Below, one piece after another: positions 1,918 through 31,733 of a stretch of DNA of 64,000 bases; position 1 is the stretch's first letter, and the number at the start of each line of letters is the position of its first letter. Under the pieces are notes generated by a model that worked only from the letters and a program-made list of their open reading frames with translations, ran no database searches and was not told the DNA's origin. The stretch is from Ramazzottius varieornatus (taxonomy: Eukaryota > Animalia > Tardigrada): NCBI GenBank assembly GCA_001949185.1, contig BDGG01000002.1:1257851-1321850 (forward strand), in the 5' to 3' direction. The translations under genes and the position numbers were made by a program.

Positions 1918-3919
1918 TACATTCTTAAGCCTTAAAGTTCTGCCACCTCGCCACCCCCCCCCCCCCCGTATTCTACAGAATCATACCGTGCGCCCAGTCC
2001 ATTCCCGGACCAAAATGCATATTCAGAAATCATCAAAATCTTAGCAGTAGGCCGCAAAGGCCTACTCAAAGTCACAGCGGAAATCTAGTTTCAACAAGCA
2101 GCGGATGCTGAATAGGATGAACTTTTCGAATACGGAGAGGCCAGTCAGGTTCAGCACTCAACCTCCTTTGCGACCTGCACGTGGTTGAGATTCATTTCAT
2201 TTGGATTTTTGAGATTTGGTTTGGCTCTCCCTTTTTTTCGCCGTTCACAACGGTCCTTGCTTTCCTTAACTTTGTTGGACACGATGTGCTACTTCGACAC
2301 AACCAGCCATCGATGGCTGAGAACTTCATTCATGCTTTACCCTGGATGCTCGGGTGCTTCGAAGGATGCGCTGCTGTAGAAGCTGTCGCTGAAATATCAG
2401 AGGTACGTGTGACACTGGGAATATAGGATCACGGCTTTTGCGGGACAGTCCCTACTTAGCCGAGTAGACGTACGCACACATCAGAACCATGAAAGATGAT
2501 GCTTCAAGGTAAGTTTTGCTTCGAGGCTGAAGTACGCAATTTTACAGAGGTGCGCAAGTTGAACGCGGTTGGCTTTGGTTTGGCAGGTGGCTCATGCTGT
2601 TTCGTTACCCTTCCGGCGTCTACCTACCATTCCACTGACTGATAGGAGCACCTGGGGATGTCTGCTGCCTGCATAGTGAGGAATTCTTTGCAGATACGAC
2701 TGACTGTTCGAAAATCGACAGAAGGTTAAATCTTCCATTCCATGGATCGGCCTTGCATGCATTGTTTAGACCAGTCCCTGGCCGTAGGAAGTGGCATCAA
2801 GAGCTCCCGTGATGATAACCACAACACTGCACCATGTTCTGCAGCGCAAAACTGCAGGGGCGCAGTTGAGCGGTCCACTTCCTACGTCCAGGGGCTGGTC
2901 TGAACGATTTACACAAGGCCGATCTGTCTGCCATTTCGGTAACCGGGTCTTTGATCAACAATCAACGGTTACTGCCACATGTACCTGCGAAAGCCATAGC
3001 AGCGACCCATGTGCCGTTATCCATTGAATGTTGATTTGCGAAATTCAGCACTGTCGGTACAGCCCTGTTGGTGGCCCCAGTGACTAGGACTATGCTTGCT
3101 CCCGACACAGAATTGTTCCGTGCATAACCGACGAGACAAGGCCGTGCTCGTGCACAGCCTTGTTTGATGTCAGTTGATGATTCCATGCATTAGTTTCTGA
3201 CCGTGTTCTAGGTGCGGTAAAATCACTAGCAGGAAGACTGCACGATGCCGGACTGTCCCTTTTGGCCAACTTTATGGTAAATTTGAAACCATTTTATTGA
3301 CCTCTGAGATTTATCCTAAAGATTCAAGTTGCGCCTTAACCAACCTCCCTGTTCTTTTTCTAGTGTATTCTAGTGCCGAAGCTCCCGTTGCTGTTCCTGC
3401 TGTGGATACCTAAAGAATAATACGGGTCTGTCCCTCTTGAGTGAATTTTCCGGTACGCAGTTCTTTTCCCAAGCTTTCACTTTCGCTTGCATTTAATTTC
3501 ATGTGCATAATCTTGCAAGCAGTTCCGCAGATGCCGACCGATGGCCCAACGGCATACCGGAGTGATGTCGCAACCCTTCGACTACCAGCAAAGCCTCCTT
3601 TCTTCTTTCTGGCGGGAAATTGTTAGTCTTTTGTAGGTCTTGAGCCTTTGAAGCAGTTTACTCTCTCTGATCTTCTTTTGAGTTTTTACAGCTTTCGATG
3701 GGCGGAAAACAAACATTTAGATTTTCTAAAAACTTCGAACTTCACCTACTGATAACTTCGGTTTCCCAGATCTTAAAAGTTCGAATTTCGGAGCAGTAAA
3801 GATCACCACCAGCATCCAGAAATTCAGTCTTGAGAACTTCACGAACGACGAAATTTTCCCGCAACATATTTTACGGAAAATTTTCACAGGAGTCCTCCTT
3901 AATTTCTCGGGAATCCGGT

Positions 3920-4714
3920 CAGTGTTGTTTCGATCAATACAATTGATAATTGAAAATGGCCGAAAACGAGGGTTTTGGAATTCCAATACGACAATTTCAA
4001 ATTGAAAATTGCAGGCTGGACAATTTTGATATTAATTAGAACTGTAGTGGAATTCGGAAAACAGAACAAAATTATAATTGGTAATCGAAATACAGAATGT
4101 AGCAATTCAAATTATTGAATTTGCGCAAAACAGCGTGGTAAAGCGCACGTAGGTGCATCAAGTGTCGGAGTTTCTAGGCGTGTTTGACGCTTAATTGGCC
4201 GAATGTGTGTGCGTATGTGCATGTCGCACGATGGCGAATGACACGATGCTTAGTACTGCGTAGCTTCCTGAACCACGCGCGGTGCTTCAAAGTACAAGCG
4301 AAGTTGAACCCCGGTCCCAATACTTTTCTCTACTAACCCCTAAGGGATGTTTCGCGGTTATGGTGGCATACGCGCGAGACTTTCAGAAGCATGACAATCG
4401 GGTTGACGTCAGCGCATCCGTACACAGTGCCTTGGCAGTACCATGCTTTGTGCTAAACATCTGACGGGCATTCTACGCGCATGAAACGAGAGGTTTGCGG
4501 TACGTTACAGTACGTATGAATGATATTATTAGAATGACGAAAATGAACTAATATTAAAATAACATCAAATGCTGTCGCGAGCTGAATTCCAATTAATTGT
4601 AATTACTAATTCAGCTGGATTGAATCTCACATGATTGAGATAGCTGTGGCCCGAGGTATTCCAAGTAATCGTAATTGCAAGGAGAATCAAAAAAGTCCTA
4701 TTGAAACAGCACTG
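3920..4714 (-). mobile_element. ~795 bp non-autonomous hAT-like element, copy 1
   Basis: Termini CAGTGTTGTTTC / GAAACAGCACTG (11/12 inverted). The body is a diverged reverse complement of 6089-6888. Flanks aatccggt/atggcggt are a weak 8-bp TSD. Confidence 0.75.
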
Positions 4715-4894
4715 ATGGCGGTTAGGGATCGGGATCGGGATCGCGACCAGCACCAGCAACGGGTACATGTCCAAGCTTCAGATCGTCAACGCATGGTCAC
4801 GAACGGGGGTACCGGATTGTGAGACGAGAACTGTGCAACCCTGACCCAGAGCAACGCTCTAGCATTAGCGGCTTCCTAGCACACTGGGATAAAA

Positions 4895-5208
4895 TTAGCT
4901 AGTGGTCCCGACCACTGGGAGGGCCGAGCGAGTGCGACCGAACACCGAGAAAACCAACATGTTATGCAACACCCCCTTCCTCCACTCACACCATTGCGGA
5001 GACAAAGACGAGTCGGCTGAACGCTGCAGACGTGTTCTCGGTAACGGACTGAATAGGGTTTTCGATCTACAAACCAAAATTTCGAGCACTCCGATCAAGT
5101 AGCGCATTATTTCACACTGCAGAGTTTGAAATTTCAGCAAGCTTCATCTTTGGCGACATCCATTGAAATCATGACAAACTCAAAAGGGCCTCGCTTCGAT
5201 CGGCCTGA
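4895..5208 (-). mobile_element. 314 bp non-autonomous Helitron-like element, copy A
   Basis: Near-identical reverse complement of 7808-8121. On the minus strand it starts A|TC and ends with hairpin AGTGGTC-GG-GACCACT followed by AGCTAA|T. No TSD. Confidence 0.75.
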
Positions 5209-5581
5209 TTCTCAGATGCCTGTAACAATCTCGCTCGCTCGGCCGTTCCAGTGGTCAGGAGTCCTGATATATCATATATCATATTTATCCCAGCACTAGT
5301 CAGGACCACTTGCTTGTGCTGGTTCAGGTCGAAAATCTGATGGACTTGCAGAAGAGACAAGATCGGAATTCAAGTGGGGCACAGTGAATCAGGCGTGTCC
5401 CGTGGATCACTTGGCGCGCCAGGTCCAATTCGCTGGTTGCTCTGATTCCACCAAAATTTCGAATTTCGTACAAACAGGTCAACAGTACAGTTAACTCGGC
5501 CTGCACAAAAGCTCAAATTCTGTGCAGCGATATCAGGCAAAACAAAAGCTTCGTGGATTGCTCCATGGCATAAAACCTGTA

Positions 5582-5752
5582 CGGGCACGAAGGGGAAGTT
5601 TGGAGCATGTTAAAAGTTTGGACCATACAATTGCGAAACAGCTGGACGGAAATACGTGCGTACGAGTGCTGTTCACACAAATGCACTTTCTGGCAATTTT
5701 CTATGGTTTAATCCGTCTTTTCCGTCTGATCCAAACTCCCCCTTCGTGCTTG
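5582..5752. mobile_element. TA-flanked MITE (CACGCACGA-type TIR family)
   Basis: TA|CGGGCACGAAGGGGAAGTTTGGA ... TCCAAACTCCCCCTTCGTGCTTG|TA; related to 53859-54025. Confidence 0.7.
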
Positions 5753-5871
5753 TACGTATGCTGTGCAAGGCGGCAATATGACTTGCACGCAGGTCCAGGA
5801 ACGGCTGGCTGTATCGGTTGGTGCACCAACCCATTTCGGATGCTTGTTTCTCATCGGAGTAATATGCAGTA

Positions 5872-6068
5872 CACGCACGACGAGAAAATATGGGCCAGTA
5901 AGAATTATGGACCAGGCGGAAAAGACGGCAAAATGGGAATCCAACCGTAGAAAAGTGACAGAAAGCACATCAATGTGAATGCGTCGCGTGCTTACGTTCT
6001 TCCGTACTGCCATAGCGAAAAGGCCTAGTCCATAATTTTCACTGGCCCATAATTTTTCGTCGTCCGTG
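5872..6068. mobile_element. TA-flanked MITE (CACGCACGA-type TIR family)
   Basis: TA|CACGCACGACGAGAAAATATGGGCCAGT ... ACTGGCCCATAATTTTTCGTCGTCCGTG; homologous to 13523-13690 and 16572-16765. Confidence 0.75.
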
Positions 6069-6088: not shown

Positions 6089-6888
6089 CAGTGTTGCTCT
6101 AATATGAATTTTTCGATTCTAATTGCATTCACGATTAATCAGAATACTTCGGGCGGCAGCAATTTCAATTATCTGAGACTCTGCTCAGCTGAATTAGCAA
6201 TTACAATTAGCCAGAATTCAGCTTGCATCAGCAATTTAAATTATTTCAATTGTTGTGGTTCATTTTTTGGATCTGGATATTCCCCAAATACCGTGTTTTA
6301 ATGCGACTTAAGCCTATCGTTTCATAAGCGTGGAATGGATGTTGGATGTTTAGCTCAAAACATGTTGTACTCAAGGCATTAAACACGAATGCGCTGATGG
6401 AAGCAAGTATTGTAATGCTTCCTGGAGCCGTGCGCGTACATCGTCACGGGAAACATCCCTCCAGAGGTCGGTAGGGAAAAATACCGGGACCGGGCTTGAA
6501 CTTCGCGCTTACATCGCTGCACCGCGCATGATCCGCAAATCAACACTGTAAGCCTCGTGCCTTTCTCCTTCGTGCGACATGCACATGCGCATAGCCGGCA
6601 TAGGTGTTCGCCCAATCGAGCGCTAAAGACACCCAGAAACTCCGATACTTGGGACACCCACGTGCGTTTTACCGCGCTGTAGGGCGCAAATCCAATATTC
6701 TGAATAGCCACATTCTGTATTTCGATTACCAATTATAAATTCTTCCGTTTTCAGAATTCTAATACAATTCTAATTTATATCGGAATTACCCAGCTTGGGA
6801 TTCCCAGTTTCAATTGTCCTATTGGAATTCAAAAACGGTCGTTTTCGGCCATTTTCAATTATCAATTGTAATGGTCGGAGCAACACTG
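6089..6888 (+). mobile_element. 800 bp non-autonomous hAT-like element, copy 2
   Basis: Perfect 11-bp TIR CAGTGTTGCTC / GAGCAACACTG; 8-bp TSD gttttaag (6081-6088) / gttttagg (6889-6896). Confidence 0.85.
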
Positions 6889-7260
6889 GTTTTAGGGGTG
6901 GTTTGCGTTCAATGGAGACAATGGGGGTAGCCAACAGCGAGAAGGATTGCACGGGTCATAGCAGTCAAGGGTCGACTTCATTAACACTGTAGTGTTTATG
7001 CACAGATTGTGTCCGATTGAAATCCGTGGCATGGAAACACTGATACCACCATATCACAATGCGAAAATTTTATTGTTATTCAAACAGTTCCAGACTAAGT
7101 GAGTTTTGCGTTCAGTCACCGTGCTGACCACATTCAACTCTCACACATACTTGGTCGAGTTGGTCGTTTATGGAGTGGTGCAACCATCGAATATTCTTTT
7201 GCCGCACTTTGGTTGTGTAGCATGAGTTGAGCCAATAAATTGTATCTTCCGCAGGGCGAA

Positions 7261-8415
7261 ATGGGTCGTTGTGAGTTCAGTGTACACGATAGTATCGGAG
7301 TCTTGGTGAAATGCCCCATTCTGCTTACCGTTATCTTAACCGCGTGTGTGGCGGAATCAACTTCTGCGCATGTAGAAGATTTTGAATGTTTAATATGTGA
7401 ATCTGGCAGCGGAATAAGTGAGAAATGTCTGGACCCCATACGACCTCACTTTGACGATTACCGGAAGTGTTCCACCGGTCATTGCTTCGTGCGTCATACT
7501 GGATCAGGTAAGTTCGCCGATCTGTACGAGTCGAGCTAGACTTGTTCTTGGGCTCCCACGAATGATAGTATAAACTAGTACGCAGTTAAGCTAACGTGTT
7601 GTTACAGCGAGATCAGTGGATCGGGGCTGCCTTGACATATTGTCGGATGACGAACAGACGCATTGTGCAACTTTGGAATCGTCGCTGAAGAACCAGTCTG
7701 TACTAAACGCAGGCGTCGGCACTGATGAATGCTGGGTCTGCGGGGCCACCAAGTGCAATGTCGTACCACTGCGACTGACGGTAAGCAGTAATGATATCCA
7801 CTTTTCATCAGGCCGATCGAAGCGAGGCCCTTTTGAGTTTGTCATGATTTCAATGGATGTCGCCAAAGATGAAGCTTGCTGAAATTTCAAACTCTGCAGT
7901 GTGAAATAATGCGCTACTTGATCGGAGTGCTCGAAATTTTGGTTTGTAGATCGAAAACCCTATTCAGTCCGTTACCGAGAACACGTCTGCAGCGTTCAGC
8001 CGACTCGTCTTTGTCTCCGCAATGGTGTGAGTGGAGGAAGGGGGTGTTGCATAACATGTTGGTTTTCTCGGTGTTCGGTCGCACTCGCTCGGCCCTCCCA
8101 GTGGTCAGGACCAGTTGCTAGTTCTACCACTTTGCTAGCGCTTTCTCTTGATCAGCAAGGACCGTTCTATTTTGGTTAATAGAATAACGTCTCGTTTTGC
8201 AGGAGAAAACAATGTCATGGATAATATTCGTGGGCGCTGCTATTGGATGCGTTTCAGGGACTATTTTCATTTCGGCTCTTCTATGGTATTGTCGATGGTT
8301 GTACCAGGGAGGAAAGGTGTCAGTCGACCTGAGTGGCCCGCAGATATACGTGATCAGGAACGAAAATTCTCTATGGGACTTCGTGGACCGTATTTCTAAT
8401 CTTGGGCGAAAATAA
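7261..8415 (+). CDS. Ly6/uPAR (three-finger, quiver/sleepless-like) cysteine-rich type I membrane protein, 3 exons
   Basis: Exons 7261-7507, 7608-7780 and 8203-8415 splice in phase at GT-AG sites. Hydrophobic N-terminus, then FECLIC...C...C...C..DRGC...C...CWVCGATKCN, a TM segment (WIIFVGAAIGCVSGTIFISALLWYC) and a short tail. Start codon uncertain. Confidence 0.7.
7808..8121 (+). mobile_element. 314 bp non-autonomous Helitron-like element, copy B (in intron 2 of the Ly6-like gene)
   Basis: A|TCAGGCCGATCGAAGCGAGGCCC ... GTGGTCAGGACCAG hairpin ... CTAG|T: TC/CTAG ends, AT target, no TSD. Confidence 0.8.
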
Positions 8416-22825: not shown

Positions 22826-24119
22826 ATGCACTTCGGTCTGGATTTCTTTGAACTCTTTGCCAAGCACGGTCATGTCTTTACCCTGGTCTTCTCCATGTGG
22901 TGTTTCTTGTTTCACACAGGTTCTTCCTTCGTCATCAATTCAGACTCACAACGGTATCGCACCTGGCCAAACGGGATTGTAAACTTCATATTACCACCGA
23001 ACGAATATAGTGAGTTTCATTCCCAATTTTTCTGTCACAGTGCTATCTCGAAAAGCCGGTGTACTGTTCATACGTGCCTTATCAGATGCTCAAGAGGAAG
23101 GAGTGATACGTCAGGCGATGCAGCAGATCCAGAACGACATGAGCGGATGTGTTCGTTTTCAGGAAGTCTTTCGACCAACGACGCCAGGTCTTCGCTACAC
23201 TGTCATCACACACAACGGCGGACTTTCTGGGTACACAAACCGAGGAACGAGTTTTGATGTGCTATTGTGGTCGGTATATTCACCCCCTCATGAAAAAGCA
23301 TGTCCTTTGCAGAGTGGGAGGGCAGTCCTGTTATGCCTTTCCTGGGATGGTAGTTAGCCAAACTGGTCAAGGGCAGTTTATGGCCATGCAAGGGGGAACC
23401 AACGGATGTCTGGCTAGTCCACGACAAGCTATGCGGCTGCTAGTAAGCCTACTGGGTCTTCGAAGCGAGCACAATAAGCCCAACAGGTGGTTTCGAAAAG
23501 TACTGTATGGTGATCACCTTTCATGCCCCTGAGTGTCCAAGCAATTTTTTGCAGAGACAATTTCATCCAGATCAATCAAGCCAACCTCAATGCCGGTATC
23601 AGTACTGAAATGGTTCTTTACACAGTTCCAGAGCTCTGTGTAGATTCAATTTGTTGCTTGCAGTTGCAATGGGAAATAACATTTTCAACATTTATGATGC
23701 CAGCAAATCTTTGTCCGACTCGGGGTTCGACTATAACTCAATCACGCTACCGGATTCGCAGACTGTCTATTCTAATAACGGCCAACCGACGATTGTCTCG
23801 AGAACCGGCACACCTTTCCAGAATCCCGGCAGACTTAGTCCTCAAGACTGCCAGGCGCTGCGCTACATGTACAACTGTAATATTCAGTGCAACGGCGAGT
23901 CAAACGGGTCAAACGGTACGCTGTCCAACTTCGCCTCTTTTTACTGCCAGTAAGCAGAGATCAAAAGTGTACGTATGCCGATTTTTATTGTCTCTGACAA
24001 CAGGTTTCACAACACCCCCACCACATCTACCATTCTCACCTTTTCCGACTGGCTTTACTTTTTTCTCAACTCGAGTTCCTTCTTCGACATTCGATGTCAG
24101 CGTGGATTTCAAGAAATAG
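22826..24119 (+). CDS. Secreted astacin-fold (M12A) protein lacking all catalytic residues, paralog 1
   Basis: Exons 22826-23009, 23086-23230, 23313-23486, 23555-23595, 23664-23915 and probably 24004-24119. Landmarks WPNGIV, IRQAM...GCVRF, SCYA..G, GC, EHNKPNRD, FDYNSI, LSPQD...MYNC. The zinc motif reads RLLVSLLGLRS. Start codon and last exon are uncertain (an alternative stop is at 23953). Confidence 0.85.
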
Positions 24120-25366
24120 ACCAACAGCTTGAATTTTTCCTGTCAGGAAATGACTTTTGTGTGCCATAAATTTCCTCAAAGAACAGGACGCTCGTACCAA
24201 TTTGCTACCACCTGTTACTTCCACGAGAAAAAAAATCAGATTGCCTCTTTCCCGCCCGTTCTTCCAGATTGTCCATACAACTTTCAAGCTGTCTCGGCTG
24301 AACTATGAGTCGTTTCGTAGTATTGAACAGCAGCTTAAAAAATTTGACTAGTGTGACTTCCAATGGGGAAGACCCATCGTGACGACTAAACTGTTGTCCA
24401 CAGAACCCATGTTAGAGTTTCGATCCGACATCTGCCATCAACAGGCCGATAACCGTCTTAGTTGCACGTGGAAATTGAAAAAACATCCACGGAGAACATC
24501 AAGATACTCAGCGATTGAATTTTAAACAATAAATTCGGCCATTCTGCCGAGAAACCTTGCTCTATGAAAAAAATTTTCACTCTTGACCTGATCGTCAGAT
24601 TCATGGTTTTGATGACTTTTCGAGTAGCCCAGCTCGTGGTCTAATTACAATCGTAATTGTAATTGATTTTAATTGTTATTCCAATCGCAGTGCCGCATGA
24701 CTTAAACGAAAAACTAATTTTTGGAAACGACCGCTAAAACCGCGAAAGCTGATAAACTTTTGGCTTCTCTCCTCCTCTAGCTTGATGTCAGTTACGACCC
24801 TTCCTTAAAAGATTTCTGGTCGTTGATTTCTCAACGGGTTGCAAAAAGGATGTCAGACCAGGAAAAACTAATGTGCAAGTTGAGGAACGATCCAGTCGAA
24901 AAAGCCATGATTTTATGGGTGGCAGCTAGTTGGTGCGAGCGCTCTGTAGTACTACTGTAGTACTATGGATAGTGTGCGGGCTGGTAGAGGAAATTCTCAA
25001 GTACGTCCCACTTTGGAAAAGTTTTCACTGAAAATCGCAACATGGGCACTTTTACCTACTTGGCTCACCTAGCCTACTCTCGAAAATGTTTTTGCATAAT
25101 TCTCAAGCCGTGGCGTTTCGAGTGTTCTGATTTTTATTATACAGTTTTGCGGTACATCCTGGCCTGCGATACTTGATACTTTTCTCGTGCGTAGCTCAAG
25201 ATCCACAAGGTACGCAAAAATAAAGTTGCAATTTGGGACTTCACGAGCTTCGTGTAAAATTTAGGTCAGCCACATGGCTGGGTATCCATATCATTGTCAC
25301 CTTCAGAGTTACCGCATAACCGTAATTCTTTAACTATTGGTTTTGCGCCAGTAGAGGTCTGTGGAG

Positions 25367-26950
25367 ATGTCCCTCGGCGCAGCTTTGCTCTTCGGCGTGA
25401 TTGCAGTTGTGAACAGCGCTGTCCTGAACAGCGACCCCCAGTATACCCGATGGCCAAATGGAAAGATTCCTTTTTACCTTGCTCCTAACGAATACAGTAT
25501 GGCCGGCAAGATTTGAGATATTCTGCTGCGTATCCTCAATGAAACCTTTAATTTTCTTTTTCAGCTGCAGCGGAACGCACTATGATCGGACAAGCCATGC
25601 AGAAAATGAGCATTGATACCGGCGGCTGTATCCAGTTCGAAGAACTGACTTCACTCCCCGCAGCAGGAACTATGCGATATGTATCCATCTCGAAAGCTGG
25701 AGGAATAGGGTAATGGGATATCCCAATTATTGCTTATCGAAGTAGCTAGCGTAAGACTGGAAGCATGGGCAAATGTTCTCATCCGGGTCGCTATCTAAAA
25801 TGGCGCACGCTCGTGACCCATGCCAATGAAAGCATGCGCCGCTTTAAAAAACGATGTGAATGAATTCGTTTTGTTCAAGCGCCACACGTTCTTTTTGCTA
25901 TTGACCAAAAGCGTGCGCCATTTCGGAATAAGATCCGGATAAGTTTAATTGCCGACGTCCGAAACGAAGACCGTACTATTTTAGCGCACCATCGCCAACT
26001 TGTTATTCCTTCCCCGGAATGGTGGCGCAACAAACCGGCCAAGGTCAAGCCATGTCCATTCAGGGTGGTCAGAGTGGTTGCATGAACAGTCCTCGGCACA
26101 TCATGCGTCTCCTGGCCAGCTTGACTGGGCTCCGCTCTGAACACAACAAGCCGAACCGGGACCAGTTCGTCACAGTCAGCCCGCAGAACGTGGAACCTCG
26201 AGTGCAACCCTTCGTCCCGCTGAACGCGTTCGACCCGAGTAAAGTCATTAGTAACCCCTACGACTTCGACTACAACTCCATCACGATGATCGACCCACTG
26301 CAGTTTAGCGGAAACGGCGCCGCTGTAATTCAGTCAAGAACCCAGACGCCGCTGATCAACAGCGGCACTTTGAGTATGAAGGACTGTCAAGCGATTGCAT
26401 GGTTCTATCAATGCAGCGCCACCTGCCAAGACCGTAAGCTTTTTTCTGCCTTCACCTCTCAACGAGTTCGCAGGAATAAGCTTGATGTTTTCATTTTGCA
26501 GCTTACGGAGCTGGTGGACTTCAAAGCAACACGTACGGCTTGAACAACGTTCAAGGTCCGCTCAATCAATTCGGACTACCAACCAACGGGCAGAATTTGT
26601 TCAACCCGAATCAACAGCAATTCCCCAACCAGCAACAGTTCCCCAGCGGACAGGTACCGTCATCATTCAATCAGCTCGGACAGCCAGTGAATGGTCAGGT
26701 ACCGCAGAACTTATTCAACAACGGCCCGATGTCAAATGGGCAGTTTCCCAATGGCCAAATACCGGTCAACCAGTTCCAGCCGTTTCCGTCTAATCAAAAC
26801 CAGCAACCAATAAATGGCCAGTTCCCGACGAATCAGTTCTCAAATGGGCTCAGTGGGCAACTACAGCCCAATAATCAGCAATTTCCCGGGCAAGTCAATG
26901 GGAACTTCCAGACACAACCCTTCAGTAACAATATTGTACCAAGCGGATAG
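25367..26950 (+). CDS. Secreted astacin-fold protein lacking catalytic residues, with Q/N/P/G-rich tail, paralog 2
   Basis: Exons 25367-25496, 25565-25709, 25985-26433 and 26502-26950, all in phase. Signal peptide MSLGAALLFGVIAVVNS, WPNGKIPF, GCIQF, TCYSFPG, RLLASLTGLRSEHNKPNRD, FDYNSITM, then a low-complexity last exon. Confidence 0.88.
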
Positions 26951-29481: not shown

Positions 29482-31733
29482 ATGGAGTCAATAGCAAGCC
29501 TGGTCTGTCGCTCATTTTGGTTTGTCTTTTTCACGATGGATATCCACGATATTCGTGGTGCGACCCAGCGTCCTAACATTGCCTTCTTCCTCGCTGATGA
29601 TCTGGTACAGCGAGCTGCAAGCAAGAAGCGATACGACTAAGCGATGTTCGATGCTCCATACTGCACTTTTGCTTTCAGGGACGCACAGACGTTGGATACA
29701 CGGAAGGCAGCAGCCAAACGCCCACTCCTACTATCAGCAAGCTGGCATGGGACGGTGTCATACTTAACCGCTTTTATATCATACGAACCACGTTTGCACA
29801 CCATCGCTGGCAGCCGTCTTGACAGGAAAATTTCCCATACACACAGGTTACGTCTTTGCCTGATCAGGTCTGTCGTAAGTGAGGTGTAGAATGTTGGCCA
29901 TCTTTAGGCTTGTAGAATGCTGTCATCGTCCATGGTCAAGTTATAGCGTTACCCCTACATCACCATATTCAAACGGAATATCTCAAACGGCTTGGCTATC
30001 AGACCTTCCTCGTTGGAAAAGTAAGTCATAGGCAACCTAACTTTAGTTCGAACTATGAGTACAGCAGAACTTATTTCGTTTAGTGGCACCTTGGATCACA
30101 CTCGAGACAGTTCATGCCCCGTAAGTTTGCGTATGCCATGAATACAAACGAATACAATAAAGTGCATCAATATGTTCCTTCCAAGATGCCCGAGGCTTCG
30201 ACCGGTCGTTTGCAACTCTCGGGCCGAGTTGCAATTGGTTTAACTACGAGGAACATGCAGCGTATTTTCCTAAATACAGTATTCATATTTTTTTGATGGA
30301 TTTTACTGATTTCCCAGACCTTTACGAAGGGACGAAGTCTTCGAGAAGACGGGCTACGCGTTCTAGCTAACGACACCAACAAATTTTACCTGCCCGACTT
30401 GTTAACCCTGAAAGCAGAGCAGTACATTCACGACGCCGACCCATCGGTTCCGTTCTACCTTCACTTTGCCACCCCACTTCCACACACAGGCTATGCCAGT
30501 GACGGCACACCCAATTATCAACACACTCTGCCAACCTAACGATTTCGACCGAGCGCCTTCAGCTTTCCAGCGAAATATCCACGACGAAAAGAACAAGTTT
30601 GTGAGCATCCCTCACCACTTGTCAGCTCATCCAGACATGTCGGCTGTACAGTTGTCGTCGTAGCGCTGATAGAAGCAATGGGTGAAGCGTCAAGCGCCTT
30701 ATTAGCGCTTTATCGCACAAAGGTATTATCAACAACACCATTCTCATTTTGGCATCGGACAACGGAGGCGCACCAGCTGAGCTCAATTTCAACCCAGCAG
30801 TCCAAGCCATCAACCACGGTCAAAACTGGCCTTTACGTGCCGAGAAAGGATCATTTTTCGAAGGGGGTGTCCGAGTACCCGCTTTCGTCTGGTCGCCTCT
30901 CTCGAAAAGGCGAGGGCGAATGACAGACCAGTTATTCCATGCGGTGGACTGGTTACCGACTTTGTGGGAAGCTGCTGACGGTGATCCAGCTGAGCTAGTC
31001 AATGCAGGTCTTGATGGCGTCAGCCAGTGGAAATCCATTCAAGGCATCGTACTCATGTCTGGGCACCTTTGTTATTATATTTCCTCTTCCTCGAGAGGTG
31101 TTTGCCTTGAGTCTCTCTGGTATTCCGCAAGTACCACCAGGACTGTAAGCAGGAAGGAAATGTTTCTGAATGTGGATCCCATCTTTGGCGAGTACGCAAT
31201 GATTTATCAGGATCCTCATGGAAAGTTGTACAAAATTATCGGAGGAAATGCTTACAACAACACACTGGGTGCTATAAAATGGTACTTTAAAATTCTCGAA
31301 CGTAATTTAGTAGGTTCGTTGTTTTATGGTGAACGCCTCGTACAGGTTTGCTCCAGAGAACACAAATAGTGGTAAAGACAGAAACTGGCGGAGGAGGACT
31401 GCAGCTTCCGCTAAGTGTAATTACCCGTGGGCCCAAGATATTACACCCTGCGTACCTTGGAAGAAAGACTGTTTTTTTGATCTGATTAACGATCCGTGCG
31501 AACTAAACAACCTTGCCAGTGCCTATCCGGCCATGGTACGTGCCCTTCAGCTGAGGCTTCGACAGTAAAACGCTTCAGCCGTGCCAGCTCAGTTTTCCGA
31601 GTTTGACCCGGCTTCCAGTCCCGACTTATGGGATGGTTGGAACGTGCCGTAGCTCGATCCGCAACCGATAGACGATGGAATCACTACGAACTACGAACCC
31701 CTTCGGGACACGCACACCGAACTGGTTCATTGA
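29482..31733 (+). pseudogene. Arylsulfatase B/I/J-like pseudogene
   Basis: RPNIAFFLADDL, CTPSLAAVLTGK, LGYQTFLVGK|WHLG, SDNGG, NWPLRAEKGSFFEGGVRVP, HAVDWLPTL, FDLINDPCELNNLA; in-frame stops (e.g. TAA 31566-31568) and frameshifts. Confidence 0.9.

What the first reader, a model, noticed from the sequence alone, without database searches (positions are those of the whole stretch)
22826..26950. Tandem pair of conserved 'pseudo-astacins' with the whole zinc-binding site replaced
Seen: two intact, spliceable genes carry astacin fold landmarks, but HExxHxxGFxHEHxRxDRD reads RLLVSLLGLRSEHNKPNRD (from 23434) and RLLASLTGLRSEHNKPNRD (from 26106). The Met-turn SIMHY reads SITLP / SITMI. Established: M12A catalysis needs the three His, the catalytic Glu and the Met-turn. 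All are lost (H>R, E>L, H>S, H>S, M>T). Inference: the paralogs are clearly diverged elsewhere yet keep the same substituted cleft, the cysteines and a shared FPGMV.xQTGQGQ loop. That pattern suggests selection on a non-enzymatic role (binding, decoy or matrix scaffold) rather than decay, unlike the broken genes next to them.
Basis: partly seen in the sequence, partly recalled or inferred. Interest (0 to 1): 0.85.

Follow-up and report, generated by a model that had tools for sequence, protein, structure and literature searches.

The report
Two zinc-less astacin genes in a tardigrade
Two neighbouring, intact genes of the tardigrade Ramazzottius varieornatus encode secreted proteins that keep the astacin protease fold but have lost every zinc-binding and catalytic residue. 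They belong to a large, selectively maintained family, named members of which are all tardigrade, that I could not find described in print.

Summary
The window is Ramazzottius varieornatus contig C2.

- **Gene 1** is annotated RvY_03834 (303 aa, six exons, 22826-24119). **Gene 2** is a 390-aa four-exon model (25367-26950) that appears to be unannotated.
- **Astacin homology:** both carry a Pfam Astacin domain. An AlphaFold model of gene 1's protein matches BMP1, meprin and astacin at Z 21-22.
- **Dead site:** H92, E93, H96 and H102, the Met-turn Met and Tyr149 are all replaced. There is no propeptide.
- **Not an isolated pair:** this genome holds at least 33 such dead domains against at least 15 intact astacins.
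- **One clade:** about 70 database clusters form one well-supported clade. Every named member is from Ramazzottius, Hypsibius or Paramacrobiotus.
- **Old duplication:** each gene has its own relatives in other genera, so it predates the Hypsibioidea/Macrobiotoidea split.
- **Selection:** synonymous sites between paralogues are saturated, while dN is 0.18-0.5. The substituted active-site helix is the most conserved segment of the family.
- **Tail:** gene 2, its paralogue RvY_04948 and a Paramacrobiotus relative share an uncharged Q/N/P/G/F tail.

The most likely role is a secreted, non-catalytic binding or matrix module. This is inferred, not shown. The scan had already found this family on other DNA of this genome. 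I found no published description, only unnamed 'Peptidase M12A' orthogroups in a 2017 supplement.

The parts
22826..24119 (+). Gene 1 = RvY_03834, 303 aa. Exons 22826-23009, 23086-23230, 23313-23486, 23555-23595, 23664-23915, 24004-24119.
   Evidence: The six-exon model, built from window.fa in a local script, is identical to database protein P0156. Pfam Astacin E 1.7e-14 covers profile positions 1-189 at residues 46-254. AF2 pLDDT 84, pTM 0.78. Z 22 to BMP1, meprin and astacin.
22826..22927 (+). Gene 1 predicted signal peptide (about 34 aa). It is followed directly by the mature-domain start, with no propeptide.
   Evidence: Hydrophobic N-terminus read by eye. Model residue 36 aligns to residue 1 of mature BMP1 and astacin.
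23338..23376 (+). Gene 1 FPGMVVSQTGQGQ, the counterpart of the astacin CxSxVGRxGGxQ cleft-rim strand, 4 residues longer.
   Evidence: Profile alignment to HCE-1 and ZHE1.
23434..23486 (+). Gene 1 substituted zinc-site helix RLLVSLLGLRSEHNKPN(R). H92>R, E93>L, H96>S, H102>S. G99, E103 and R..RD are kept. The Arg codon is split by intron 3 and finished at 23555, and the Asp is 23556-23558 in exon 4.
23738..23752 (+). Gene 1 Met-turn equivalent SITLP (Met>Thr, Tyr149>Pro).
25367..26950 (+). Gene 2, a 390-aa model. Exons 25367-25496, 25565-25709, 25985-26433, 26502-26950.
   Evidence: Intact frame and GT-AG introns. Pfam Astacin on exon 3, E 6e-10. 69-71% identical to paralogue RvY_04948 in the domain. 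Not returned by length-compatible protein searches, so apparently unannotated.
25367..25420 (+). Gene 2 predicted signal peptide (about 18 aa), followed directly by VLNSDPQYTRWPNG, the mature-domain start.
   Evidence: Read by eye. Family alignment.
26010..26048 (+). Gene 2 FPGMVAQQTGQGQ cleft-rim strand.
26106..26162 (+). Gene 2 substituted zinc-site helix RLLASLTGLRSEHNKPNRD.
   Evidence: It is the most conserved window of the family.
26277..26291 (+). Gene 2 Met-turn equivalent SITMI (Met>Thr, Tyr149>Ile).
26502..26947 (+). Gene 2 uncharged low-complexity tail, 149 aa: Q 21%, N 19%, P 13%, G 13%, F 9%, with no D, E, K, R, H or C.
   Evidence: Composition. No DNA-level tandem repeat. The same kind of tail is present in RvY_04948 and in Paramacrobiotus XP_055337682. 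No Pfam or Atlas match.

Best explanation
**What is shown.** Both genes encode secreted proteins that keep the astacin (M12A) fold but cannot bind zinc or cleave peptides.
- They belong to one old clade of 'dead astacins' whose named members are all tardigrade. This clade lost the metal site once and then radiated.
- Its signature is Lys/Arg at the first His ligand, Arg two residues after the conserved Gly, Asn/Ser at the third His ligand, and Thr at the Met-turn. It also has two extra invariant cysteines and no propeptide.
- The genes have been under strong purifying selection, strongest on the substituted cleft helix itself.

**What is inferred (about 50%).**
- The permanently open cleft serves as a non-cutting docking site for an extended peptide or matrix ligand in the extracellular space, such as cuticle, basal matrix or mucus.
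- The basic side chain and the extra disulfide stabilise the fold in place of zinc.
- Gene 2 additionally carries an uncharged Q/N/P/G/F tail that would self-associate or embed in a matrix. It would then act as an adaptor tethering the cleft's ligand to that matrix.
- Gene 1 is the short-tailed version.
For: - **Homology and fold:** Pfam and fold matches.
- **Dead site:** every ligand is replaced in both genes and across the clade.
- **One clade:** 70 rows with SH-aLRT 99. All named members are from Ramazzottius, Hypsibius or Paramacrobiotus.
- **Old duplication:** gene 1 groups with Hypsibius BV898_01198 and Paramacrobiotus LOC129587676. Gene 2 groups with RvY_04948 and Paramacrobiotus XP_055337682. 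Both groupings have support 99.
- **Selection:** synonymous sites are saturated while dN is 0.18-0.51. The substituted helix is the most conserved window.
- **Structural core kept:** both astacin disulfides are retained and two clade-specific invariant Cys are added.
- **No propeptide:** the mature domain starts straight after the signal peptide.
- **Fusion partners suggest binding:** relatives are fused to hemopexin repeats, a ligand-binding-receptor domain or Thr-rich mucin-like stretches.
- **Tail is conserved in kind:** the composition is shared across two superfamilies.
- **Precedent for the tail:** secreted prion-like low-complexity proteins build the C. elegans pharyngeal cuticle (PMC9629831).
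Against:
- Gene 2 was not found among public proteins of compatible length. It may have had no transcript support in the published annotation.
- The active-site helix is also a structural core element of astacins. Its conservation may therefore reflect folding constraints rather than ligand binding.
Confidence: 0.6

Rival explanations
1. Decoy or regulator of the active astacins. The dead domains compete with the at least 15 intact astacins of this genome for substrates, or soak up endogenous astacin inhibitors. This would tune proteolysis during moulting or matrix remodelling.
For: Intact and dead astacins coexist in the same genome. The cleft-forming elements are the best conserved parts. 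Pseudoenzymes regulating their active relatives is a recognised theme (PMC11266112).
Against: - More than 30 diverged copies with many different fusion partners are hard to explain by titration alone.
- No co-expression or physical linkage with an active astacin was seen in this window.
Confidence: 0.2
2. Purely structural matrix proteins. The astacin fold is just a stable globular head, and the tails (Q/N/P/G/F in gene 2, P/T/F-rich in gene 1) do the work. There is no specific ligand in the cleft.
For: The tail composition is conserved across genera. There is precedent for secreted prion-like cuticle proteins in nematodes. The tail evolves faster than the domain but keeps its composition (dN 0.37-0.40 against 0.18).
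Against: The highest conservation sits in the former active-site helix and cleft rim, not in the tails. Many family members have no such tail.
Confidence: 0.12
3. One or both genes are recently dead pseudogenes or unexpressed relics, with gene 2 the more likely candidate.
For: Gene 2 was not found in public protein sets. Expression could not be checked. Gene 2 lacks the C-terminal D-[FLI]-(G)-[KR][KR] motif that six sub-clade members share.
Against: - Both frames are intact over 303 and 390 codons, with all splice sites canonical.
- The nearest paralogue is at synonymous saturation, yet amino-acid identity is 50-71%.
- Exon GC and GC3 exceed those of introns and intergenic DNA.
Confidence: 0.05
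4. Still an enzyme with a different chemistry: metal-independent, or using another metal site.
For: Glu103 and, in this sub-clade, the following His are kept. A conserved Arg/Lys lies in the cleft.
Against: The general base and all three His ligands are gone, and the residues at those positions vary within the clade (for example L/I/Y/F at E93, and S/N/H/I at H96). No known metzincin works without them (established knowledge of the family).
Confidence: 0.03

Closest known systems
Canonical astacins (MEROPS M12A, Pfam PF01400: astacin, BMP1/tolloid, meprins, hatching enzymes, nematode NAS proteins)
   Same: - Same fold (Z 21-22, rmsd 2.3-2.9 A over about 190 residues).
- Both conserved disulfides.
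- Gly99, Glu103, the RxDRD segment, the DYxSI segment, and secretion.
   Different: - All zinc ligands, the catalytic Glu, the Met-turn Met and Tyr149 are replaced.
- There is no propeptide or aspartate switch.
- There are two extra invariant cysteines and a 4-residue insertion in the cleft-rim strand.
ADAM pseudoproteases (M12B: ADAM11, 22, 23, 2, 7, unc-71)
   Same: They are metzincin domains that lost HExxH and act through protein-protein interaction rather than cleavage (PMC11266112).
   Different: - They belong to a different subfamily, are membrane-anchored and have disintegrin domains.
- They typically keep the Met-turn. Here the Met is Thr in 99% of the clade.
- That review of pseudometallopeptidases lists no astacin example.
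MMP-style catalytic domain plus hemopexin layout
   Same: Some members of the tardigrade dead clade carry hemopexin repeats after the astacin-fold domain (P0022, P0030).
   Different: The two window genes have low-complexity tails instead, and the head domain is an inactive astacin, not an MMP.
Scattered degenerate astacins in other animals (scallop XP_021349755, Necator ETN80164, mayfly CAB3384142, moth XP_063529624)
   Same: They have partly or fully substituted zinc motifs on an astacin domain.
   Different: They fall outside the 70-row tardigrade clade, and their position is unresolved (support 56-88). They lack the K/R...R-N/S-E...T signature.
APPG / ABU-PQN prion-like cuticle proteins of C. 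elegans
   Same: They are secreted, low-complexity, prion-like proteins in an ecdysozoan (PMC9629831). This is an analogy for gene 2's tail only.
   Different: No sequence relationship was shown. They have no astacin-fold head.

Membership tests
Astacin family, Pfam PF01400 (fold and homology) | Significant match to the family profile above the curated cut-off | tested here: met
   Gene 2 exon 3 scores 39.5 bits and gene 1 protein 54.4 bits, against a cut-off of 22.5.
Astacin family, Pfam PF01400 (fold and homology) | Astacin three-dimensional fold | tested here: met
   The AF2 model of RvY_03834 (pLDDT 84) gives Z 21-22 to BMP1, meprin, TLL1 and astacin. The orthologue model has TM 0.73-0.79.
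Astacin family, Pfam PF01400 (fold and homology) | Two conserved disulfides (astacin C42-C198 and C64-C84) | tested here: met
   All four cysteine columns are conserved in 93-99% of the clade and are present in both genes. Pairing itself is inferred.
Active astacin metallopeptidase (MEROPS M12A peptidase) | HExxHxxGxxHE zinc-binding and catalytic consensus | tested here: not met
   R-L-x-x-S-x-x-G-x-x-S-E in both genes.
Active astacin metallopeptidase (MEROPS M12A peptidase) | Met-turn SxMHY with Tyr as fifth zinc ligand | tested here: not met
   SITLP and SITMI. Thr replaces Met in 99% of the clade.
Active astacin metallopeptidase (MEROPS M12A peptidase) | N-terminal propeptide that keeps the enzyme latent | tested here: not met
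   Pfam profile position 1 and residue 1 of mature BMP1 and astacin align within about 10 residues of the signal peptide.
Active astacin metallopeptidase (MEROPS M12A peptidase) | Zinc content and proteolytic activity | not testable with these tools
   Needs recombinant protein.
Tardigrade dead-astacin clade (unnamed) | Placement inside the 70-row clade | tested here: met
   Both genes lie in a 12-row sub-clade (support 99) inside the 70-row clade (support 99).
Tardigrade dead-astacin clade (unnamed) | Signature residues: K/R at H92, Arg at position 101, N/S at H102, Thr at the Met-turn, and two extra Cys | tested here: met
   Both genes carry R, R, S, T and both extra Cys.

The most novel reading that the evidence does not exclude
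The dead-astacin radiation is a phylum-specific invention of a new kind of extracellular binding module, in which a basic side chain and an extra disulfide replace zinc. The gene-2 type, with its uncharged Q/N/P/G/F tail, would form an extracellular gel or condensate in cuticle or intercellular matrix. That gel would contribute to the tardigrade's ability to survive drying, as an outside-the-cell counterpart of the cytoplasmic gel-forming heat-soluble proteins.
Probability: 0.1. Interest if true: 0.85.

Novelty: new variant of a known kind. Interest (0 to 1): 0.55.

Why it matters
Pseudoproteases are known from ADAMs and carboxypeptidases. Neither the 2024 review of inactive metallopeptidases nor the 2023 astacin review treats inactive astacins.

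In this genome, zinc-less astacin domains outnumber the intact astacins I could count (at least 33 against at least 15). They are old, conserved and fused to many kinds of tails. Every named member of the clade is a tardigrade.

That makes them a candidate for a lineage-specific extracellular toolkit for cuticle, matrix or mucus. They are also a natural experiment in how a metzincin fold stays stable and useful without its metal.

The orthologue in the RNAi-tractable species Hypsibius exemplaris (BV898_01198) makes the question testable.

Tried and rejected
- **Orthologue DNA:** No DNA of Hypsibius or Paramacrobiotus orthologues was available, so orthologue dN/dS could not be computed.
- **Paralogue dN/dS:** NG86 and YN00 failed because synonymous sites are saturated, and the ML dS values of 6.7-23 are meaningless. 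I report saturation plus dN instead.
- **Gene 1 sixth exon:** tail similarity to orthologues was not significant against shuffles. The exon was instead confirmed by identity to RvY_03834.
- **Literature:** no paper text mentions RvY_03834, RvY_03835, RvY_04948, RvY_08703 or BV898_01196-01201. Supplements of two tardigrade papers do not list them either.
  - A glycoproteomics paper lists another nas-like protein but none of these.
  - The C. elegans astacin survey does not discuss inactive members.
- **Gene 2 tail:** the Atlas search gave no usable hit, and Pfam found nothing on the tail.
- **Neighbours:** 19 flanking open frames gave only one sulfatase-like exon.
- **Inverted repeat:** the repeat finder missed a 14-nt inverted repeat that a script found.
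- **Joined models:** the joined 390-aa model of gene 2 was never sent to a search or fold tool. It was searched exon by exon, by reference. Joined coding sequences were assembled only inside local scripts, for the frame check, codon comparison and tree.
Full report
**Source and gene models**

The window is G000:C2:1257851-1321850 of a 55.8-Mb, 200-contig genome. A paralogue on contig C4 is GenBank GAU97396 (RvY_08703) of Ramazzottius varieornatus, and the contig lengths agree. The organism is therefore the eutardigrade R. varieornatus (lineage).

Reading the region and checking frames and splice sites in a script gives two plus-strand genes.

- **Gene 1** has six exons: 22826-23009, 23086-23230, 23313-23486, 23555-23595, 23664-23915 and 24004-24119. 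It encodes 303 aa.
  - The six-exon product is identical, residue for residue, to the database protein P0156 = RvY_03834.
- **Gene 2** has four exons: 25367-25496, 25565-25709, 25985-26433 and 26502-26950. It encodes 390 aa.
  - All introns are GT-AG and 68-275 nt long.
  - Exons are richer in G+C (0.48-0.52, GC3 0.53-0.60) than introns and intergenic DNA (0.42-0.43).

As the operators require, gene 2 was searched exon by exon, by reference. Its joined model was never sent to a search or fold tool. Joined coding sequences were assembled only inside local scripts, for the frame check, the codon comparison and the tree. For gene 1 I used the database protein P0156.

- Pfam Astacin (PF01400) matches gene 2's exon 3 alone at E 6e-10. 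It matches gene 1's protein at E 1.7e-14 over the whole profile, positions 1-189.
- An AlphaFold2 model of gene 1's protein has pLDDT 84 and pTM 0.78. It aligns to BMP1, meprins, TLL1, astacin and fish hatching enzymes at Z 21-22, rmsd 2.3-2.9 A, over about 190 residues.
- A model of the Hypsibius orthologue gives the same answer.
- A family profile aligned to solved astacins, and a 127-row domain alignment, place the substitutions as follows.
  - Gene 1 and gene 2 have R, L, S and S on H92, E93, H96 and H102.
  - Thr sits on the Met-turn Met.
  - Pro (gene 1) and Ile (gene 2) sit on Tyr149.
- Gly99, Glu103, the R..RD segment, the D-Y-x-S-I segment and all four cysteines of the two astacin disulfides are kept.
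- Model residue 36 of gene 1 aligns with residue 1 of mature BMP1 and astacin. Pfam position 1 falls about 10 residues after the signal peptide in the paralogue too. There is therefore no propeptide.

**It is not just a pair**

- A six-frame search of the genome with gene 2's exon 3 found 39 exon-level matches.
- I fetched the loci and read the motif region. This shows at least 33 domain copies with the zinc site replaced in the same style: M-[KR]-x-x-x-x-x-L-G-[LK]-R-[NS]-E-x-x-R-x-D-R-D.
- Among the 30 best Pfam Astacin loci there are at least 15 copies with an intact HExxHxxGxxHE.
- A scan of 1.84 billion representative proteins found only 185 hits at E <= 0.001. Most carry the same dead motif.
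- In a maximum-likelihood tree of 127 domains, 70 dead rows form one clade with SH-aLRT 99.
- Every member of that clade with a source name is from Ramazzottius, Hypsibius or Paramacrobiotus. These represent two superfamilies of Parachela.
- Unnamed members come from environmental or unannotated assemblies.
- Degenerate astacins from a scallop, a hookworm, a moth and a mayfly fall outside this clade, and their placement is unresolved.

**Position of the two genes within the family**

- Both sit in a 12-row sub-clade (support 99) marked by R at H92 and by EHNKPNRD.
- Gene 1 groups with Hypsibius BV898_01198 and Paramacrobiotus LOC129587676 (support 99).
- Gene 2 groups with its paralogue RvY_04948 at C2:4.58 Mb and with Paramacrobiotus XP_055337682 (support 99).
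- The gene 1 / gene 2 duplication therefore predates the split of Hypsibioidea and Macrobiotoidea. Their adjacency is old rather than a recent tandem copy.
- Gene 2 has lost the phase-2 intron after NKPNR that gene 1 and RvY_04948 keep.

**Selection**

- Four-fold degenerate sites are no more alike than base composition predicts.
  - Gene 2 against RvY_04948: 0.25 observed, 0.25 expected.
  - Gene 1 against gene 2: 0.21 observed, 0.24 expected.
- dS is therefore saturated, and formal ratios are not meaningful.
- Over the same history, dN is only 0.18 (gene 2 against RvY_04948) and about 0.5 (gene 1 against gene 2). Both long frames remain intact.
- The 19-residue window covering the former zinc-binding helix is the most conserved of about 240 windows. 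This holds both in the 70-row clade and in the 12-row sub-clade.
- Gene 1 and gene 2 share 17 of 19 residues in that window, against 42% elsewhere in the domain.
- Clade-specific conserved positions, absent from intact astacins, are:
  - Met before the first ligand position;
  - Arg at position 101 (89%);
  - Thr at the Met-turn (99%);
  - two extra cysteines (100% each).

**Tails**

- Gene 2's last exon encodes 149 residues: Q 21%, N 19%, P 13%, G 13% and F 9%. It has no charged residue, His or Cys.
- RvY_04948 has a 291-residue tail of the same make-up. The Paramacrobiotus relative has an N/P/I/F-rich tail of 252 residues.
- There is no DNA-level tandem repeat. The bias is therefore maintained at the protein level.
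- The tail's dN (0.37-0.40) is about twice that of the domain.
- Gene 1 has a 46-residue tail after the domain's last Cys (pLDDT under 50 from residue 261). Its last about 35 residues are P/T/F-rich.
- Other family members carry hemopexin repeats, a receptor ligand-binding domain, mucin-like Thr-rich stretches or a second dead domain.

**How it most likely works**

Shown:
- The proteins have the astacin fold.
- They lack all catalytic and metal-binding residues and lack a propeptide.
- They have signal-peptide-like N-termini.
- They are under purifying selection.

Inferred:
- The permanently exposed cleft is used to hold, not cut, an extended ligand in the extracellular space.
- The conserved basic residue and the extra disulfide compensate for the missing zinc and Met-turn.
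- Gene 2's uncharged tail anchors or self-assembles in a matrix. Secreted prion-like low-complexity proteins build the pharyngeal cuticle of C. elegans (PMC9629831), which is an analogy only.

Rivals are a decoy or regulator of the active astacins, a purely structural role, recent pseudogenisation (mainly for gene 2), and a different enzymatic chemistry. They are weighed in the rival explanations.

**What is known**

- A 2024 review of inactive metallopeptidases lists ADAM pseudoproteases but no astacin. It notes that ADAM pseudoproteases typically keep the Met-turn (PMC11266112).
- A 2023 review of astacin evolution cites tardigrade astacins but does not use the word 'inactive' (PMC9848320).
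- The supplement S3 Data of the 2017 Hypsibius/Ramazzottius genome comparison lists orthogroups restricted to Tardigrada. The tag 'IPR001506 Peptidase M12A' occurs 22 times there with no family name (PMC5531438). The existence of tardigrade-only M12A groups was thus tabulated, but I found no description of the loss of the metal site.
- None of the gene identifiers appears in searchable text.
- This scan had already noted and followed up the same family on other DNA of this genome. My results agree with those notes and were obtained independently here.

**Limits**

- Gene 2 was not returned by three protein searches whose length ranges would include it. It seems to be missing from public annotation, which is a weak point against its expression.
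- Signal peptides were judged by eye.
- The genome-wide counts are lower bounds.

Noticed in passing
window 25367-26950: Gene 2's 390-aa product was not returned by three protein searches whose length ranges include it, although gene 1's product (RvY_03834) and the paralogue RvY_04948 were. It appears to be unannotated in public protein sets.
   Followed up: partly
window 25798-25811 and 25910-25923: A perfect 14-nt inverted repeat (AAATGGCGCACGCT and its complement) lies inside gene 2's unusually long intron 2, which is 275 nt against 68-88 nt for the others. It may be a small hairpin or MITE-like insertion. The repeat tool did not report it.
   Followed up: partly
window 24102-24116 (gene 1 C-terminus) and proteins P0007, P0008, P0006, P0151, P0002: Sub-clade members end in a shared D-[FLI]-(G)-[KR][KR] motif: VDFKK, PDFKK, IDLR, FDLGRR, GDFGKR, GDFGRK. 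The G-K-R forms resemble amidation or dibasic processing signals. Gene 2 ends in PSG and lacks the motif.
   Followed up: no
window 26042-26044 and 26081-26083 (gene 2 Cys226, Cys239); the same columns family-wide: Two cysteines are invariant in the dead clade and absent from canonical astacins. They probably form an extra disulfide.
   Followed up: partly
window 23487-23554, compared with gene 2 at 26160 and L060:4493-4608: Gene 1 and RvY_04948 share a phase-2 intron after NKPNR that gene 2 has lost. Gene 1 has an extra intron at 23596-23663.
   Followed up: yes
window 30749-31366 (+): A sulfatase-like exon (Pfam PF00884, E 1e-6, C-terminal part of the profile). It was the only recognisable neighbour among 19 flanking open frames.
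   Followed up: no
L060 (G000:C2:4580000-4589999), 3221-5250 and 6742-7808, minus strand: A second cluster of the same sub-clade. RvY_04948 (five exons, NGQFP-rich tail) lies next to a copy with MRILSYLLGLRPEHNKPNRD. That copy resembles Hypsibius BV898_01196, which carries a roughly 250-aa unassigned C-terminal domain.
   Followed up: partly
protein P0030 (Hypsibius exemplaris BV898_16936): One predicted 1296-aa protein combines an ANF_receptor ligand-binding domain, a dead astacin domain and a hemopexin repeat.
   Followed up: no
L055 (G000:C1:3886900-3894100), about 5442-5975: A dead-astacin copy whose motif region reads ...GKRNEHQRG*RS, with a stop where the family has DRD. It may be a broken copy or an intron boundary.
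   Followed up: no
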